DNA of 64,000 nucleotides from contig BDGG01000004.1 of assembly GCA_001949185.1 (NCBI GenBank), positions 4,001,777 through 4,065,776 of the forward strand. The letters run 5' to 3'. A model generated the notes under the pieces. The model searched no databases. It was not told the origin of the DNA and was given only the letters and a program-made list of their open reading frames with translations. Shown one piece after another: positions 56,701-64,000 of this stretch. The number at the start of each line of letters is the position of its first letter. Position 1 is the stretch's first letter. This DNA comes from Ramazzottius varieornatus (Eukaryota > Animalia > Tardigrada). The translations under genes were made by a program, and so were the position numbers.

Positions 56701-59700
56701 GGACTTCGACGGACCTTACCAGTCATGGCTAACTCTGACCGTTCTTTGCAGTGTTACGGATCCTTGGGAAGTCGACAGTGTTCCGTACGAAAAGCGCCCG
56801 TCGTCGTCGGATCTCCTCCGTCATTCTCTTCAGCACAGTCAAATCATCGCGTTCTACCGGCGGATCCTTCTTCGGCACGTTCCTCCTCGTCATTCCATAA
56901 ACAAGCAGGCCCAGCTTTGGATCGCTTTCCAGTCTACAATCATCCAGCATCATCGGTGACGGTGAGTGCAGTAGATTCCAAGTTGGTGTTCCCAGCCATA
57001 CTGTACGTGCTAATGAGAGTCCTAATACGTCGAATCTCGCTTGGACAGTGTCCCTTTGTCCTGGTAATGCTTCTAGGTTGTCCGTTCAAGATTCGTGTGG
57101 CCTTCCAGAAGGATAACCGAAAAATCTCCTGGCGGTTAGTTCTTGACGCCCCTAAACAATTGACTTGATTGCGTTGATCTGTGCTTTTGTCGATGAGAAC
57201 GCGCGCGTCGAAAGTCTGTCTGGCGCAGTTTTCCGTTTCTAATTGGGATGTTTGACCACCGCTGTTTCGTTCTTAGACTCTCAAGCAGTATCTTAGCAAG
57301 ATTGACGAGAATGTTTTGGTGAGGGACAACAGGAAGGAGACACCAGCTAAGAGTCCAGCCTGTATGGACAACAACGCAGGGACCAAGCTTACAGTTTGGC
57401 CTCGCGTTGTAAAGACAGGCTTTCCCTTCGAATTTCTGTTATTTCAGAATGGTCTCGTTTTCTTTCTGAAGTGCAAGAGCTTCGTTGAAGGCGAGATCAA
57501 CGTCCTCCGTTGCGGAGTCAGTTGTTATTGTCTGCACGTGAGATGCAAGTCGGCAGATTTGGAGGCAACTGGTGGCGCACTTTGTTGCATACACAAAGCT
57601 TGCCAGAGAAAGCGAGGCCTGTTGATCTACAATATCAACATTCAATAATAACACCACATCGTTTGACGAAAACCAGTCGAAATATTCAAGAGCGACGTAC
57701 AGTACGATGATGAGCAACGGCACGGTCAATGTACTTTACATCTTTCGATGCTGCGGAAAAGGCTTAGATTTCAGTCAGCGTAGGCACTTGAAAGCCTTTG
57801 CACTAGTTTTTGCCGGTATTGTCTCGCTGACTCGGCGCAATCTGGGCAGCTCAAAATAGTTCAATCAGACCCGAGTATTTTGCCGGCACTTTCGAGGGCC
57901 AAAGTGGCTTGACCGGCGACGCTAATAGGAAAACACGCGAGAGTCGCGCGACAGATAAGTTTCTGTCGACGTTGCAAATATTCTCTAAATGCCCTATTAT
58001 ATTCTAGATCGGAATTCCACTCATCTTGACCCCAATTTGGGGCAGAAAATTGCTTTAAAACGGCAAGAATAGTTCCTCGGAAAACAGATTATTGCACTGT
58101 TTTGCGATACAACTTTCAAGTTAATGCAAAGGTTTGCCGGATTGTTTTAGAAAATTATTGAATACTCTTGTTGAAGTTTCGTCGGTTGGTAGCCCAATGG
58201 GATGGTAGAAGGCAGTGAGGGTAATTTTTTGTAGGTAATCGCTAATGCACGGTTGCATTTTTTTCTCGGCGAGAGGGAGGATCTCTCATCCGTCATAAAA
58301 GCCGTGCGCCGCTCAAGTGAAGTTGGCTGGACGTAAATTATGCGGAACATTGAAATGTTCAGCTGTCAGGAGTAATAATGTCCCCGCTCGACAGTTATCA
58401 TATTGCAACATGCAACTGTTGTGACTGCGCCTGTAAAACTGCTGACAGATGATCACAGATCGGGCAAGTAAAGGTCTAATGAGCATCGGCATTTTTGTCC
58501 CGTCAGAGCGGTTATGAACGATGAGTGACTTGTTTGTGGCTTCACCGGCCTCTTTTTCCATCGGCGGTAAAGTGGAGAGGAGGTTTGCTATCGTGACTTC
58601 GGGGAACCGCGATATGCTAGACTGCGAACCTGGTCCTGATGAAGTTTTTGTTCGAGCAAGTTGTTTCCTCAAGTGACGCATACTCTCAGTGTTATTAGCT
58701 GGGAACGTGAGCTTTTTGATAAAACGATCTGGCCAGGCTTGGGTGTCGAAGAGTCTAACTCCCAACTAAATACTGATTACTGCGGAACTTTTCTGACTGC
58801 TTTGTAGCTTCGTGGTTTGAGGGTGTTCCGTTCGACGAATATTTATGTCCAATGGAATTACTGTTGGAATGTCTTCGTCCTGAGTCCTGACGACTGATAT
58901 CTTGGTTTTGCAGAACGCCAGAATGTACCCGCCAGAAACGGCAGTGGCTCCACCTACAACAGGAGGTTCACCGGCCGCCTCTTCGCAGATCCAGGAGGTC
59001 TTCCACACCCAGCATCGGTCTGCCTACCAGAACAACGTTCAGAACCAGTCCATGCAAAGCTTTGATCACACTTCTTTACACCCCGGGTCGAATAAGAATC
59101 ACAACGGCACTCCAAACGTTAGCTTCACGCATTCCTCAAGTTACCCAGTCATCACGCGCACTTCCGGTAACTTCGATTCCTCACAATATAACGGTGGACA
59201 TGGACAGCCGCTCCCGCCTTTGGCTCACTTCAATGAATACATCGCGAAGACTCAGATGACCGCGGGTACGTTTCCAGTATCTTTTCAAGAAACCAGGAGT
59301 GGAACATACTTTGGAATAACTTGAATTAACTTGGGGCGCCGGCAAACAATTTGAGCAAGATCGTTTCCCAAGTCGCGCACAGCAAAGCCAAATCAACCAC
59401 GATACGCGTCACTTGAAATTACGATCATTTTTAACCTCATTTGCCGGCTTCTCAGTTAGTATGAGCGAGGTCGACGAAATTACGTCGAGCGATATTAGCT
59501 TCTCTGAACTGAGCTTTCATTTTCTTTGCAGCTCTGAATCGGAACCCATATGGTATAGCGGCGTCGGAAGGGCACGGCGCAGAATTGCCTACCAAGCGTA
59601 TATGTGCCTGGAACCCAGCAGATGTCGCGTCGTTTTTCCGTGCTGTTGCGCGCGACAACGGTCAAGACCCTTCGCGCTTGAACGTGGGTAAGCTGTACGG

Positions 59701-61790
59701 TTTGGATGGACCAGCCCTTCTTCGGCTAGATGAGATCGACTTTCTGGAACGAGACCCAATGAACGGCGCACAGTGGTATAGGGCCCTGCGCAAATTTGTC
59801 GACCGCCGTAAGTCCTTGCCTCTCTTCTTCCACTCTTACGTTGTTCTGATCTCAGAAAAAAGAATTTGTAAATCAAGTTTGCATACTACATTGTTGGTGG
59901 TTATTTTCTCTGCAGCTCAAGTGGGTATGTTCACACCGAAGATGGAGCCAGGAGAAACATCGCCATACGTAACTGATCCTCATGCCCCATTCCTCACATC
60001 ACAACAATCAAGTGGTACGAAGGCTGTTTTCGGTAAATCTTTTGAGTCTTTCACTCGAAAACAGTTTTAATTTGGTTAAAAATTTAAACCGTCTGGAAAA
60101 TTGGGAGTTTGACAAGCAAGCGACAGGGTCGGTTTTTCAAGTGGCGCACATTTCAGCCGTATTGGCCGACAGCGTGCGCCACTTGGCAAAGACAATCTTG
60201 GCCTCAGTATCTATATCTACATCTATATCGGGTTTGGTTTTTCTCGCCACTTCAGAGTCTCACAAGTTGCTAAATGCTTTGCTATGACTGAACATGTCTC
60301 TTTCTGTCAGCAGGCCCCTTCCACGACGACTACTCGGAATACATCCAAGAGTCCTTCACGAAGGACGAGTTTGACGACATTGATATAGCAGACTCGAGCG
60401 TCGTGTACGGAAATGGTCCTCAACAGCTTCACTACGCACCTTCTCATACTAGTCAGACGTTCAACGGAAACACCGTAGTTTTCCAGAACTTCTCACCCAT
60501 GAGCCTCTGTGGAACCAGCATGACTAGTGACGGAACGGAGACAGTCAAAACAGGTATGAGTCTTCCTTTTGTTAATACTATACATTACTAGATTTGGTGC
60601 TTTATCGCTGTGGCTGATTTTTTCGGGGTTGTAGATCTAGATTCCGACATGGAGAGTAGCCGAAGCTGCACTCGATCGTCTTACACGGACAACATGAGCG
60701 GACAAAGCCTGTCAAGCTACAACTTTGAAAGTGTCTCTCCTCGCTGGTCTTCTTCCAGCCCTGAAAGCTCCTCCTCCAAACGGCAGTTCAAGCCGAGTCC
60801 CAAATCCGAAAAGCTAAAGAAGTCGAGCAGCAAACACGGTAGGTTGCTTTCAATTTTTTGATCGAAAGTCCAACCCGGAAATCCTTGGAAGTTCATCGAT
60901 GTTTCTGCTGCAGGAACCAGAGGCAACCACTTGTGGGAGTTTGTCGTTAAGCTCCTGAAGAACCCTGTCCAGGACGGAAAGCAAATCATCAAATGGGAGA
61001 ACAAAGCAGAAGGTGTTTTCCGGTTCGTGGAGTCGGAGAAGGTCGCCAAGCTGTGGGGCCAACAGAAGGCCAATCCCCGAATGACGTACGAGAAACTGAG
61101 CCGTGCTATGAGGTAAGACCCAGTTTGCGCAGTATCTTTTATTCGTAACTCACGAAGGAAAATAGCAGTGCTCTCTTACAAAATTACCCTTCTGTAAACT
61201 GACGATACCGTCCTGGTTTTGCATGTTCTTTCTGAACTTGAATGGGATCTTGCTTCTCTTAACTTCGTGCGACTATGGAATGCTGCCTGTTTGCTTTTTG
61301 CACGATGCATGACTTCTTCTAACGAAAGCGTTCTCTTTCCTTCAGGACGTATTATGGTAGCAAGATCCTGGAACCGGTTGCCAAAAACGGGAGATATCCC
61401 AAGAAGCTTGTATATAAATTCGGGTCGAAAGTAAACTGGGCCTGAACCCTCTCCTTGTTGATCTTTTCTTGTTCCTTCTGATACCCTGTCTTATTACTCT
61501 GATACATTTTCTTGCTCTCCCTTCGCTTGCATGGACTTCAGTCCTCCAGACGTTTTCGCTGTTGCGCTCTTCTCGTGTCCGTTATCTCCGTACTGTTGTT
61601 TCGTCAGGATGGATCTTGCCAAAGCTGAACATGATATAAAACATCCCGGTGTCGTACAATATCTTCATTTGTTTCTTTCCTTCTGCGCAGATACTATTAC
61701 AAGAGCAGGATTCTTCTTCCAGTCATCGGCAGACGTCTGGTGTACCAGTTCGGACCAAAAGCCTCGGGTTGGCGCTCTTCGACCTGCTAG
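53747..61790 (+). CDS. ETS transcription factor of ESE/EHF type (PNT/SAM + ETS domain) with alternative first and last exons
   Basis: PNT domain: ICAWNPADVASFF...YGLDGPALLRLDEIDFLERDPMNGAQWYRAL. ETS domain: GNHLWEFVVKLLKNP...IIKWENKAEGVFRFVESEKVAKLWGQQKANPRMTYEKLSRAMR. Common exons start at 58914; terminal exons are 61346-61445 or 61691-61790. Confidence 0.92.
59332..59454. mobile_element. Palindromic MITE-like family A, copy 6 (ETS intron)
   Basis: tggggcgccggcaaacaatttgagcaagatcgtttcccaagtcgcgcac...acgcgtcacttgaaattacgatc...catttgccggcttctca. Confidence 0.7.
60102..60254. mobile_element. Palindromic MITE-like family A, copy 7 (ETS intron) with a (TATCTA)n-like insertion in the right arm
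   Basis: tgggagtttgacaagcaagcgac...tcaagtggcgcacatttcagccgtattggccgacagcgtgcgccacttgg...atcttggcc; perfect 12-bp stem CAAGTGGCGCAC/GTGCGCCACTTG. Confidence 0.75.
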
Positions 61791-62949
61791 TGAGCTAGTG
61801 CTAACTTCCTGGTATGTTATGGCTGGTTGTCGGGTTCCCGTGCGTTACCGGATGGTACGAGCCATTTAGAGAGTTCTTTGATTAAATTGGTTAAGTTCCC
61901 CGCCTCTATATAGTTTAGGATGTTAGTCATGTTATCTTTCCGTTCCATTGGAGTTCCTTCTAAAGTTCCCCGAAGTTTGCAAACTTATGCTCGCTTCTTT
62001 GTTGTTTGTTTTCTCCGCGGCATCATATTCAAGTTTCTTGTTATGTTTCGTGGTGGATAGGTCTTCTTGTTACTCTTTCTTGTTTCATACATGGTGGAAA
62101 ATAGTCGTTTTTAGAATCAACGCCCAGCGAGAATGACTGGAGTTTTGTGTTTCGTCTTACCATTTAAACTTGTGGTCTCTGGCCGGTACAAGAACAAATT
62201 AAAGCCTGATGGTTGTCTGGCTTGACAGTTTCCCGAAGGTCTTTCTGAATTACTCGTACGCAAAGCCGATAGCGCCGAGACTGGCAACAAAAACTAAAGC
62301 GTGAATATTCAACTTTCGATGGATGCGTAGTTTCTGGATCACCGTACAGGTGGAATGGTTCCTCATTGAAATCTTGTTTGCTGTACGTAGTATCGCTATC
62401 AGCTTTGATGTATTTGCCCTGACGGCTTTACGACATAGCGTTGGCTGGACTTTAGCCCCACTCGAACCACTCTGAGCAGGGCGAAGGTTCCCGAAGTTCG
62501 ACAGAGACGCACAGTCACTTGCAGTTGGACGGAACTATGAGAAATGTCCGGCGGTGCAGGACGAGCACATCGAGCCCAGGCCCATGAACTGAGCGAGCTG
62601 GAGAGCTGAGCATTGTACTACAGTTTTCTTCCATCTTTCCCGTTTAGAAAAATGAGTCTGCTGTTATCAGAGAGTGACGCATGTTTTATCGCAATTAAGG
62701 ACGGACATTTGTTTGGAGTTGACGCTTAAGGTAAACAGTGAGTGGGTTTATCACACCTGCGAACGGGTCTGATAAGGAATTCCGTATGTATTGTATCGCG
62801 AAACGAGAGCCACCGTCGGCACGTTGTTTCGGTTCAGCATTCCAACAACGTCGCTTGCCACTAGAACGTAGATCACAGTACTTCGCCAGAAAACAAAATA
62901 CTTCACGGGACAGGATTACTGGAATAACCGACGACCCAATCAACTCATC

Positions 62950-63932
62950 ATGGCCTTAGAGAAGAACCGGTATTACGTGGTCTCGAAGTTCATTCTGTTC
63001 TTCGTAACGATCCTATATTTCGTGAGTATAAATACATCTTTTTCGCTGCTCTCTGGCTTCCCGTTTGACTCTCGAGAAAAAAACTCACATTTCTCCTTAC
63101 AGATGTTCGGGGTTGTTCTCTTCGGATTATCCGTGTGGATTCTTGCCGATCCCAACCAAGGAAAATACGTACGACGTCTGAGACTTCGAGATGTACAAGC
63201 AGGAGCTGGAATAATTCTAACGTCCTCCATCCTGCTAGTTATCACCTCTTTTGTTGGATGCGCGGCTCTCAATGGTAGCAAAAAACCCAAAACGATGACT
63301 GCGGTAAGTGTTTATCGTTGTGCAGTCTCGGGTTGTCAAGAGTAGTCCACGAAGTGATCTGCTCCAGGAACCCAATTCACAACCGGAAGTCTGTCACATA
63401 GGCGGCGCCACTTTCGGCCTGGCTCGCTTCGTTTTACATGTAACATTCGCGGCTAATATATGGGATCACTATTTCTAGTACTTCGCTCTACAAATTATCA
63501 CCCTTATCCTTCTGTTCTCTGGATCCATATTCATGCTGGCGCGAACCAAAAGCTACCAGAGCGCTATCGACTGGGAGATCGAGCGTGCTGTGCTGGAATA
63601 CGACAACCGAGGACCCAACAGAGGAGAAGCTGAAGAGTTTCTTGACGTTCTCCAGACACATGTAAGGTTTACCAGGACGTTTTCATCGTCCCTTAGGTAT
63701 CTTTTTTCGTAGTACTTAAATGCGATATCATCGCAAATTTCGCGTTACAGCTGATGTGTTGTGGTGGAGAGTCTCCTAATGACTACCGCATCCGCGGGAT
63801 CCCAGAGTCTTGCCGACGTCCTTGGCTATCAGGAACCAGTCAGATGTGGGGCTGCAAGGAAGTCACCAAACGATGGATCAAGTACAACACCGATGCCACG
63901 GCGGGAGTCGGTCTGTTCGTCTGTTCTATGCT
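62950..63932 (+). CDS. Tetraspanin (3' end beyond the window)
   Basis: YYVVSKFILFFVTILYF|MFGVVLFGLSVWILAD...SFVGCAALNGSKK; large loop with LMCCGGESPNDY..IPESC..GC; four hydrophobic segments; exons 62950-63021, 63103-63303, 63479-63661 and 63751-63932. Confidence 0.9.
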
Positions 63933-64000
63933 GGTAAGAATGCGCAAGTCCGTGGTACACTAGATTTCCCATAGTTTCGATGATTGACCGGCATAACCCT

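What the first reader, a model, noticed from the sequence alone, without database searches (positions are those of the whole stretch)
61100..61790. One ETS gene, two DNA-binding domains: alternative terminal exons swap the recognition-helix residue and the wing
Seen: the ETS domain is cut by a phase-2 intron inside the codon of the second invariant Arg (…LSRAM AG|GTAAG at 61112). Two separate downstream exons each have a pyrimidine tract + CAG, the correct phase, an intact frame and their own stop. Exon A (61346-61445) gives R-TYYGSKILEPVAKNGRYPKKLVYKFGSKVNWA*. Exon B (61691-61790) gives R-YYYKSRILLPVIGRRLVYQFGPKASGWRSSTC*. Both keep IL.PV...LVY.FG...W but diverge strongly, so this is an old duplication with both copies apparently under selection; the ORF track shows neither. 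Established: the residue after the second Arg (Tyr395 in Ets1, Gln in SPDEF, Asn in PU.1) and the beta3-beta4 wing shape ETS site preference. Inference: a splice/polyadenylation switch makes a canonical Tyr, short-wing (ESE-like) isoform and a Thr isoform with a wing 5 residues longer, probably with different target specificity.
Basis: partly seen in the sequence, partly recalled or inferred. Interest (0 to 1): 0.88.

Follow-up and report, generated by a model that had tools for sequence, protein, structure and literature searches.

The report
ETS gene with two swappable DNA-binding tails
One tardigrade ETS (ELF3/EHF-like) transcription-factor gene really does make two messenger RNAs that finish its DNA-binding domain with different last exons, and the same pair of endings is kept in other tardigrades, ticks, spiders, locusts, nematodes and probably molluscs and annelids, so it is an ancient and apparently undescribed way of getting two DNA readers from one gene.

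Summary
The ETS exon ends AG|GT at 61112, inside the codon of the second invariant Arg. Exon A (61346-61445) and exon B (61691-61790) each complete the domain in frame and have their own stop.

RNA contigs from four studies hold both junctions. The A transcript ends in a poly(A) tail at 61656, 34 nt before exon B's acceptor; the B transcript ends at 62215-62231.

Neither exon is a decaying copy:
- Exon A is 86% identical to the tail of Paramacrobiotus Elf-3-like isoform X1 and 73% to C. elegans C33A11.4 (svh-5), but only 45% to exon B, with a 5-residue gap.
- Exon B is 89% identical to Paramacrobiotus isoform X2, which matches X1 at 625/625 residues upstream.

Same-gene A and B isoforms are also annotated in a tick, a spider and six locusts. 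Fused A-then-B gene models occur in two nematodes and an annelid. A bivalve has both tails.

A-type tails replace the specificity-setting Tyr with Thr (Asn or Phe elsewhere) and lengthen the beta3-beta4 wing by five residues. AlphaFold still gives a confident ETS fold. Different DNA specificity is likely but untested.

I found no paper describing this. The closest analogue is FoxP's alternative forkhead exons.

The parts
56931..56960 (+). 3' end of an upstream exon of the same mRNA (donor GAC|ggtgagtg); the contigs carry 339-575 further upstream letters that were not mapped
   Evidence: The loose end of the main contig in all four runs maps uniquely here; boundary read
58913..59265 (+). coding exon (Gln/Ser/Pro-rich region)
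   Evidence: Spliced RNA contigs in 4 runs; GT..AG boundaries
59532..59807 (+). coding exon with a PNT/SAM-like segment
   Evidence: RNA contigs; weak Pfam SAM_PNT hit, E=0.03, below cut-off; the matching region of the Paramacrobiotus orthologue folds as a confident helical bundle
59916..60014 (+). coding exon
   Evidence: Joints 59807>59916 and 60013>60313 (cut +1) in 4 runs; boundaries
60314..60553 (+). coding exon
   Evidence: RNA contigs; boundaries
60635..60838 (+). coding exon (Ser-rich linker, basic stretch before the ETS domain)
   Evidence: RNA contigs; boundaries
60914..61112 (+). common ETS exon: helix 1 to the second invariant Arg of recognition helix 3; ends AG|gt in phase 2
   Evidence: Pfam Ets E=2.9e-22, profile positions 1-59 of 81; the main contig ends exactly at 61112 in all 4 runs
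61346..61656 (+). alternative terminal exon A: CDS 61346-61445 (Thr after the Arg, wing 5 residues longer, stop 61443-61445); 3'UTR to the poly(A) site at 61656; TATAAA at 61635
   Evidence: Joint 61112>61346 in 4 runs and a poly(A) loose end at 61656 in X4; translation; 86% identity to the Paramacrobiotus X1 tail; signal
61657..61690 (+). 34-nt T-rich spacer between A's cleavage site and B's acceptor (…tatcttcatttgtttctttccttctgcgcag). It is the polypyrimidine tract of exon B and, by inference only, could also be the downstream element of A's poly(A) site
   Evidence: Sequence; positions; the dual role is inference
61691..62231 (+). alternative terminal exon B: CDS 61691-61790 (canonical Tyr, short wing, stop 61788-61790); 3'UTR to 62215-62231; ATTAAA at 62198
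   Evidence: Joint 61112>61691 in 4 runs, contigs end at 62215-62231; Pfam Ets positions 61-80; 89% identity to the Paramacrobiotus X2 tail; signal

Best explanation
This is an ESE-type (ELF3/EHF/ELF5-like) ETS transcription-factor gene, in a genome whose size and contig number fit the tardigrade Ramazzottius varieornatus. Its DNA-binding domain is completed by one of two homologous, alternative last exons. The shared exon ends inside the codon of the second DNA-contacting Arg of recognition helix 3. If the donor at 61112 is joined to the proximal acceptor (61346), the message is cleaved and polyadenylated at 61656. The protein then ends with the A tail: Thr instead of the specificity-setting Tyr, and a beta3-beta4 wing five residues longer and richer in Lys. 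If the proximal acceptor and poly(A) site are skipped, the donor is joined to 61691 and the protein ends with the canonical ELF3-like B tail. Both forms are made. The exon pair arose by an ancient tandem exon duplication, at least before tardigrades, arthropods and nematodes split and probably in the protostome ancestor, and both copies have been kept by selection. Shown: both junctions, both 3' ends, conservation of both tails as same-gene isoforms in other phyla, and a confident ETS fold for the A form. Inferred: the two isoforms read different DNA sites (position +4/+5 through the Tyr-to-Thr change, flank or affinity through the longer wing), and the choice is a competition between proximal splicing/polyadenylation and distal splicing.
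For: Sequence and frames: (all eight introns GT..AG; TATAAA 21 nt before A's cleavage site; ATTAAA before B's).

RNA: in runs X1, X3, X4 and X6 (studies P1-P4) the main spliced contig ends at 61112. Separate contigs join the end of that exon to 61346 or to 61691. A poly(A) tail sits at 61656. No differences from the window were seen.

Conservation:
- Exon A is 24/28 identical to Paramacrobiotus X1, 19/26 to C. elegans C33A11.4, and 13/29 to its own exon B.
- Paramacrobiotus X1 and X2 are identical at 625/625 residues upstream and differ only in the A or B tail.
- Amblyomma, Argiope and six Schistocerca species have A and B isoforms of one gene.
- Pristionchus, Strongylus and Owenia models fuse A then B.
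- Mya arenaria has both tails in one 90% cluster.
- In the tail tree, A and B split as one branch with support 84/96, and each Ramazzottius tail sits next to its Paramacrobiotus counterpart.

Fold: the A-isoform model has pLDDT about 97 over the ETS domain and matches Elf3-DNA 3jtg with TM 0.91 and rmsd 1.4. The loop between strands 3 and 4 is 12 residues in A and 6 in B.

Specificity residue: mutating this Tyr to His, Asn or Gln shifts ETS specificity at +4/+5 (PMC2905244).
Against: - No binding data exist for either isoform, here or in any paper found.
- The junction contigs carry only 28-30 letters of the upstream exon. That is the overlap expected at a k=31 graph branch, but it is one letter short of the tool's own 31-letter rule for 'bridging'. 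Raw reads were not available.
- Ramazzottius exon A departs from two nearly invariant A-type positions (PVPK to PVAK; GW to NW) and exon B from one (K to Q). Some relaxation of A in this species cannot be excluded.
- Hypsibius exemplaris has only B-tail models in the database, and its genome could not be fetched.
- C. elegans has only A-tail models.
- Contig depths cannot give isoform ratios.
Confidence: 0.85

Rival explanations
1. Both isoforms are functional, but the switch does not change which bases are read. It would instead tune affinity, DNA-flank or shape contacts, partner proteins or autoinhibition through the wing and C-terminus, or it would act mainly through the two different 3'UTRs (211 nt against about 430 nt).
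For: The wing and the residues after strand 4 lie outside the base-reading face in solved ETS complexes (established knowledge; structures listed). A-type tails add Lys residues (PK..G.YPKK) that would suit backbone contacts. The two mRNAs have entirely different 3'UTRs.
Against: The residue right after the second Arg is changed in every A-type tail seen (Thr, Asn or Phe). That position was shown by mutagenesis to set +4/+5 preference. The coding differences themselves are conserved across phyla, which selection on a 3'UTR alone would not do.
Confidence: 0.25
2. The A isoform is a weakened or non-specific DNA binder that acts as a competitor or modulator of the B isoform, as was proposed for the second FoxP forkhead isoform.
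For: The base-contacting Tyr is lost. In the FoxP analogue, the alternative exon removes direct base hydrogen bonds (PMC3002244).
Against: Both invariant Arg residues and the rest of helix 3 are kept. The fold is predicted with high confidence. In C. elegans the annotated products of the orthologue carry only the A tail, so A is probably a working factor by itself. The paralogue L008 also keeps only an A-type tail.
Confidence: 0.12
3. Exon A is a decaying duplicate or cryptic exon whose use is splicing/polyadenylation noise in this species.
For: Pfam does not recognise exon A alone. Two nearly invariant A-type positions are changed in this species.
Against: The frame is intact. The junction and poly(A) tail appear in four studies, with contigs of the same order of word depth as B. 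Exon A is 86% identical to another tardigrade's annotated isoform and 73% to a nematode's.
Confidence: 0.03

Closest known systems
Vertebrate ESE subfamily of ETS factors (ELF3, EHF, ELF5)
   Same: Best solved-structure matches are EHF 10sm_A (E=7e-34), Elf3 3jtg and ELF5 1wwx. The layout is the same: PNT-like region, then the ETS domain at the C-terminus. The B tail (RYYYK..IL..V.GRRLVY.FG....GW) is the ESE signature.
   Different: The vertebrate and other deuterostome proteins seen here carry only B-type tails. No A-type alternative was found for them, though the searches were word-based and could miss one.
FoxP/FoxP1 alternative forkhead-domain exons (Santos et al. 2010, PMC3002244)
   Same: A tandemly duplicated exon pair inside a winged-helix DNA-binding domain, used alternatively. 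It is dated to the base of Bilateria and changes DNA-contact residues. Later gene duplicates kept only one of the two exons. That parallels paralogues L008 (A only) and L009 (B only) here, and the B-only vertebrate genes.
   Different: It is a different fold family (forkhead, not ETS). The FoxP exons are internal, whereas here they are last exons, each with its own stop, 3'UTR and poly(A) site, so polyadenylation takes part in the choice.
ETS specificity classes I-IV (Wei et al. 2010, PMC2905244): Tyr in Ets1/ELF, His in class IIb, Asn in SPI1/PU.1, Gln in SPDEF
   Same: The same helix-3 position, directly after the second invariant Arg, is the one that differs between the A and B tails. Locust A tails carry Asn, as SPI1 does.
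   Different: There the variants are separate genes, while here they are isoforms of one gene. Thr (Ecdysozoa) and Phe-Cys-Arg (Spiralia) at this place are not among the four classes, and they come with a 5-residue wing insertion.
C. elegans C33A11.4 (svh-5 / tag-97, renamed ets-1 in PMC4618690)
   Same: PNT plus ETS protein whose tail (RTYYEKQILVPVPKTGLYPKKLVYKFG) is 73% identical to exon A. It is the nematode orthologue group of this gene.
   Different: Only A-tail products are annotated. The paper does not mention alternative ETS tails. B-type exons are seen in other nematodes (Pristionchus, Strongylus, Trichuris).

Membership tests
ETS family (Pfam PF00178) | About 85-residue winged helix-turn-helix with conserved Trp residues and two invariant Arg in helix 3 | tested here: met
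   The common exon hits Ets at E=2.9e-22 with LWEF, W, WG and LSRAMR present. The second Arg is rebuilt by AG+G (exon A) or AG+A (exon B).
ETS family (Pfam PF00178) | C-terminal third (end of helix 3, strands 3-4) completes the fold, with tail B | tested here: met
   Exon B hits Ets profile positions 61-80 (E=0.0075 alone). The orthologous B isoform P0002 folds with pLDDT about 97: H3 617-629, strands 633-635 and 642-645.
ETS family (Pfam PF00178) | C-terminal third completes the fold, with tail A | tested here: met
   Exon A alone gives no Pfam hit. The orthologous A isoform aligns to EHF and Elf3 through its whole tail with a 5-residue insertion. It folds with pLDDT 93-97 and superposes on Elf3-DNA 3jtg with TM 0.91, rmsd 1.4. 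This was tested on the Paramacrobiotus protein, not on a joined Ramazzottius model.
ESE subfamily (ELF3/EHF/ELF5) | ETS domain nearest to ELF3/EHF/ELF5, at the C-terminal end of the protein | tested here: met
   Top PDB sequence hits are EHF, Elf3 and ELF5. Public names of orthologues are Elf-3-like / ETS homologous factor. Stops follow 6-13 codons after strand 4.
ESE subfamily (ELF3/EHF/ELF5) | N-terminal PNT (SAM) domain | tested here: inconclusive
   The window exon 59585-59810 gives SAM_PNT at E=0.03, below the cut-off. Most orthologues have PF02198 precomputed. The Paramacrobiotus models show a confident helical bundle there, but it was not fold-searched separately.
Alternative last exons (splicing coupled to alternative polyadenylation) | One shared donor and two acceptors, each exon with its own stop, 3'UTR and poly(A) site; both mRNAs observed | tested here: met
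   Joints 61112>61346 and 61112>61691 appear in 4 runs. There is a poly(A) tail at 61656, and B contigs end at 62215-62231. Signals TATAAA 61635 and ATTAAA 62198. Caveat: the junction contigs hold 28-30 upstream letters, not 31 or more.
Tandem-duplicated homologous alternative exons | The two exons are homologous, in the same phase, and are never joined to each other | tested here: met
   Same phase-2 start; 45% identity with one 5-codon indel. The A contigs run unspliced through A's stop to the poly(A) site. 'Never joined' rests on contigs, which can miss rare forms.

The most novel reading that the evidence does not exclude
Protostome ESE-type ETS genes carry an alternative-last-exon switch, more than 500 million years old and so far undescribed, inside the ETS domain. 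The A form (Thr, Asn or Phe in place of the specificity Tyr, plus a 5-residue longer, Lys-rich wing) would be a fifth ETS DNA-recognition class, produced from the same gene as a canonical class II form. Lineages then resolved the pair differently: they kept both (tardigrades, chelicerates, locusts, some nematodes, a bivalve), kept B only (deuterostomes), or split them into paralogues (the A-only and B-only copies in this genome).
Probability: 0.45. Interest if true: 0.8.

Novelty: new variant of a known kind. Interest (0 to 1): 0.7.

Why it matters
ETS factors are a textbook case of many paralogues sharing one core motif (GGA[A/T]), and how they reach different targets is a long-standing question. 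Here a single gene swaps the residue that published mutagenesis shows sets the +4/+5 preference. It also swaps the wing, through a choice of last exon that has been kept across phyla.

This gives a natural, matched pair of ETS domains, identical up to the second Arg, for testing what that residue and the wing length do.

It adds ETS to the short list of transcription-factor families (FoxP is the clearest case) in which an ancient exon duplication inside the DNA-binding domain does the job that gene duplication does in vertebrates.

It flags mis-joined gene models in Pristionchus, Strongylus and Owenia.

It points to an unexamined feature of the C. elegans svh-5 orthologue group.

For tardigrade biology, it offers a regulator whose isoform ratio could be followed through development and anhydrobiosis.

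Tried and rejected
No genomic loci of Hypsibius, Paramacrobiotus, tick or nematode orthologues could be fetched, so exon order, intron positions and dN/dS in relatives were not examined. Co-retention rests on protein isoform models.
Exons were searched one by one by reference, and the natural Paramacrobiotus isoforms P0152 and P0002 stood in for folding.
- The third homologous-protein search (whole Hypsibius protein) returned only the query, because its Gln-rich region flooded the word candidates. The annotated Ramazzottius protein was therefore never seen.
- The representative search did not return the window's own protein. It is presumably represented by a relative.
- scan_promoters_terminators uses bacterial consensus patterns and is irrelevant here.
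- The search of earlier findings gave nothing for this place. One unrelated note on another gene turned up.
- Seven of the eight literature searches found no description of alternative ETS-domain tails; the eighth was run to find the specificity paper. Subscription journals are not covered, so this is not proof of novelty.
- Considered and rejected: chance ORFs in an intron; genomic DNA contamination of the RNA runs (the contigs are spliced at eight GT..AG introns and one has a poly(A) tail); exon A as an internal exon spliced on to B (A contigs run through A's stop to the poly(A) site).
- Contig word depths (A/B: 17.3/36.7, 14.6/19.2, 16/6.3, 8.5/21.2 in X1, X3, X4, X6) are given only for the record. 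The tool states they cannot rank parts of a gene.
Full report
**1. What is in the sequence**

The region 60914-61112 encodes the first two thirds of an ETS domain: TRGNHLWEFVVKLLKNPVQDGKQIIKWENKAEGVFRFVESEKVAKLWGQQKANPRMTYEKLSRAM (Pfam Ets, E=2.9e-22, profile positions 1-59 of 81). The exon ends ATG AG|gtaagac, so the intron splits the codon of the second invariant Arg after its second base.

Two places downstream have a pyrimidine tract plus CAG and continue in the right phase:
- 61346 (AG+G = Arg) reads TYYGSKILEPVAKNGRYPKKLVYKFGSKVNWA, then a stop.
- 61691 (AG+A = Arg) reads YYYKSRILLPVIGRRLVYQFGPKASGWRSSTC, then a stop.

The two tails align at 13/29 identities with a single 5-residue gap. 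At DNA level there is only codon-scale similarity and a 15-nt indel.

**2. Both are used**

These are RNA assemblies in practice: the contigs skip GT..AG introns and nothing lies on the introns upstream.
- In every run, one contig covers the exons 58913-59265, 59532-59807, 59916-60014, 60314-60553, 60635-60838 and 60914-61112, and stops exactly at 61112.
- Two further contigs each begin with the last 28-30 letters of that exon. One goes on at 61346, the other at 61691.
- The A contig runs through A's stop to 61656, where run X4 shows a 24-A loose end. In X1 it reads on to 61682.
- The B contig ends at 62215-62231.
- TATAAA lies 21 nt before A's cleavage site, and ATTAAA lies at 62198 before B's.
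- No base differences from the window were seen.

This is the pattern a k=31 assembly graph gives at an alternative-splice branch.

The junctions are therefore very strongly indicated in four independent studies, but they were not seen in single raw reads. Contig depths (listed under Tried and rejected) are of the same order for A and B, but they cannot be read as ratios.

**3. The gene and the genome**

The assembly has 55.8 Mb in 200 contigs. By my own knowledge this fits Ramazzottius varieornatus, and the nearest proteins are from the tardigrades Paramacrobiotus metropolitanus and Hypsibius exemplaris.

A six-frame Pfam scan finds four genes with an intron at the same ETS position.
- One paralogue (L008) has a single A-like tail with Tyr: YYYATNILVTFEKHGYPKKLVYKFGPAFNWRNA.
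- Another (L009) has a single B-like tail with His: HYYKSKILNSVPGRRLTFQFGPRASGWTEID.

Both tail types are therefore long-standing parts of this genome's ETS repertoire.

**4. Conservation**

An all-against-library search with the common exon returned ESE-like proteins. Their sequences after YEKLSRAM-R fall into three types:
- B: YYYK..IL..V.GRRLVYKFG.
- A1: TYYEKQILVPVPKTGLYPKKLVYKFGP..GW.
- A2: FCRSAGYF..VPKNGKFPKKLCFKFG.

Cluster look-ups and tail-focused searches named the proteins.

Same-gene pairs:
- Paramacrobiotus Elf-3-like X1/X3 carry an A tail (RTYYGSEILQPVPKNGRYPKKLVYKFGPKATGW) and X2 a B tail. X1 and X2 are identical at 625/625 residues before the junction.
- Amblyomma americanum EHF-like: eight isoforms carry A and five carry B, on the same upstream sequence.
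- Argiope bruennichi: X1 and X3 are A, X2 is B.
- Caerostris darwini has two models, one of each type.
- Six Schistocerca species: X1 is A-type, with Asn after the Arg, and X2 is B.

Other evidence for the pair:
- Gene models of Pristionchus pacificus (named svh-5/tag-97), Strongylus vulgaris and the annelid Owenia fusiformis run an A-type exon straight into a B-type exon (...YPKKLVYK|YYYNTKILLPVSGRRLVYKFG). This is best read as a predictor joining two neighbouring alternative exons, and it gives the order A then B.
- In the bivalve Mya arenaria, an independent model with a B tail sits in the same 90% cluster as RefSeq isoforms with A2 tails.
- A2 tails occur in gastropods, bivalves, an octopus, a nemertean and an annelid.
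- Deuterostome hits (sea urchins, hemichordates, vertebrates) had B tails only.

How the window's exons compare:
- Exon A is 86% identical to the Paramacrobiotus A tail and 73% to C. elegans C33A11.4. Exon B is 89% identical to the Paramacrobiotus B tail.
- A tree of 36 tails separates A from B on one branch (ultrafast bootstrap 84, SH-aLRT 96). It has only 32 columns, so the finer order is unresolved.
- That tree puts each Ramazzottius tail beside its Paramacrobiotus counterpart, L009 with exon B and L008 among the A tails.
- The shared 5-residue insertion is an independent rare character for the A group.

**5. Structure and likely mechanism**

The nearest solved structures by sequence are EHF, Elf3 and ELF5. 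The A tail aligns to them throughout, with the insertion between strands 3 and 4.

I did not build a joined Ramazzottius model. Instead I folded the natural Paramacrobiotus isoforms with alignments of A-type or B-type relatives. Both give an ETS domain with pLDDT about 97.
- In A, helix 3 is 548-559, and the strands are 564-565 and 578-581, leaving a 12-residue loop.
- In B, helix 3 is 617-629, and the strands are 633-635 and 642-645, leaving a 6-residue loop.
- The A model superposes on the Elf3-DNA complex 3jtg with TM 0.91 and rmsd 1.4 Å.

Wei et al. 2010 (PMC2905244) showed by mutagenesis that the Tyr right after the second Arg sets the preference at core position +4. Changing it to His gives class IIb behaviour, and changing it to Asn gives class III behaviour at +4 and +5. 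In SPDEF, Gln at this position together with a Ser accounts for the preference for T at +4, and mutating the pair moved SPDEF towards class IIa. Every A-type tail changes exactly this residue: Thr in tardigrades, chelicerates and nematodes, Asn in locusts, Phe in spiralians.

My reading is that the two isoforms recognise overlapping but different site sets. The longer, Lys-rich wing probably adds backbone or flank contacts. That step is inference.

On the RNA side, A's cleavage site lies only 34 nt before B's acceptor. The T-rich spacer between them is B's polypyrimidine tract. It could also serve as the downstream element of A's poly(A) site, which would make the two outcomes compete directly. 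This too is inference.

**6. Comparison with what is known**

[quoted passage not shown] Using alternative exons to change a DNA-binding domain is a known kind of device.

The closest parallel I could document is FoxP. There, a tandemly duplicated exon inside the forkhead domain is alternatively spliced, dates to the base of Bilateria, changes DNA-contact residues, and was reduced to one copy in later paralogues (PMC3002244).

Differences here:
- The family is ETS, not forkhead.
- The alternatives are last exons, each with its own poly(A) site.
- The A variant falls outside the four described ETS specificity classes.

None of the literature searches turned up a description of it, nor did the paper on C. 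elegans svh-5 (PMC4618690). One search was the search that located the Wei et al. paper. The isoforms do exist as unremarked automatic RefSeq models. I therefore rate this as a new variant of a known kind, with the proviso that subscription literature was not searched.

**7. Limits**

- One protein search was lost to low-complexity sequence.
- Only one read-laying run, on contigs and not on raw reads, was possible.
- Isoform ratios, their regulation, and any difference in DNA binding remain to be measured.

Noticed in passing
L008:1341-1695 (G000:C1:1239356-1239544 region, minus strand): A paralogous ESE-like ETS gene with the same phase-2 intron but a single A-type tail that has Tyr restored (YYYATNILVTFEKHGYPKKLVYKFGPAFNWRNA). 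Its helix 1 reads KKLINFVCDLL, so it lacks the otherwise invariant Trp of LWEF. It has a long branch in the tail tree.
   Followed up: partly
L009:1492-1845 (G000:C1:1178076-1178276 region, plus strand): A second paralogue with the same intron position and a single B-type tail that starts RHYY. His is the class IIb residue of Wei et al. It groups with exon B in the tail tree (98/92). With L008, it looks like the A/B pair resolved into separate genes.
   Followed up: partly
window 61656-61682: In run X1 the exon-A contig reads on past the poly(A) site to 8 nt before exon B's acceptor. Some transcripts are therefore not cleaved at 61656, or are unspliced precursors.
   Followed up: no
window 62826-64000 (+): The next gene downstream starts about 600 nt after exon B's 3' end and has contigs with higher word depth in all four runs. 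Its ORFs look membrane-spanning, and a CCGG motif at about 63754 suggests a tetraspanin. It was not analysed.
   Followed up: no
proteins P0215/P0278 (Pristionchus pacificus svh-5/tag-97), P0210 (Strongylus vulgaris), P0019 (Owenia fusiformis): Public gene models that run an A-type ETS tail directly into a B-type tail. They are almost certainly mis-joined alternative exons and should be split into two isoforms.
   Followed up: partly
proteins P0213, P0252-P0254, P0257, P0260 (Schistocerca, six species): The locust A-type isoform has Asn after the second Arg (RNYY), the residue that defines the SPI1/PU.1 class. This appears to be an independent arrival at that state inside the A exon.
   Followed up: no
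protein P0001 (601 aa): The top-scoring library protein holds three near-identical copies of an SPDEF-like ETS segment in tandem. This may be an assembly or annotation artefact. It is unrelated to the finding.
   Followed up: no
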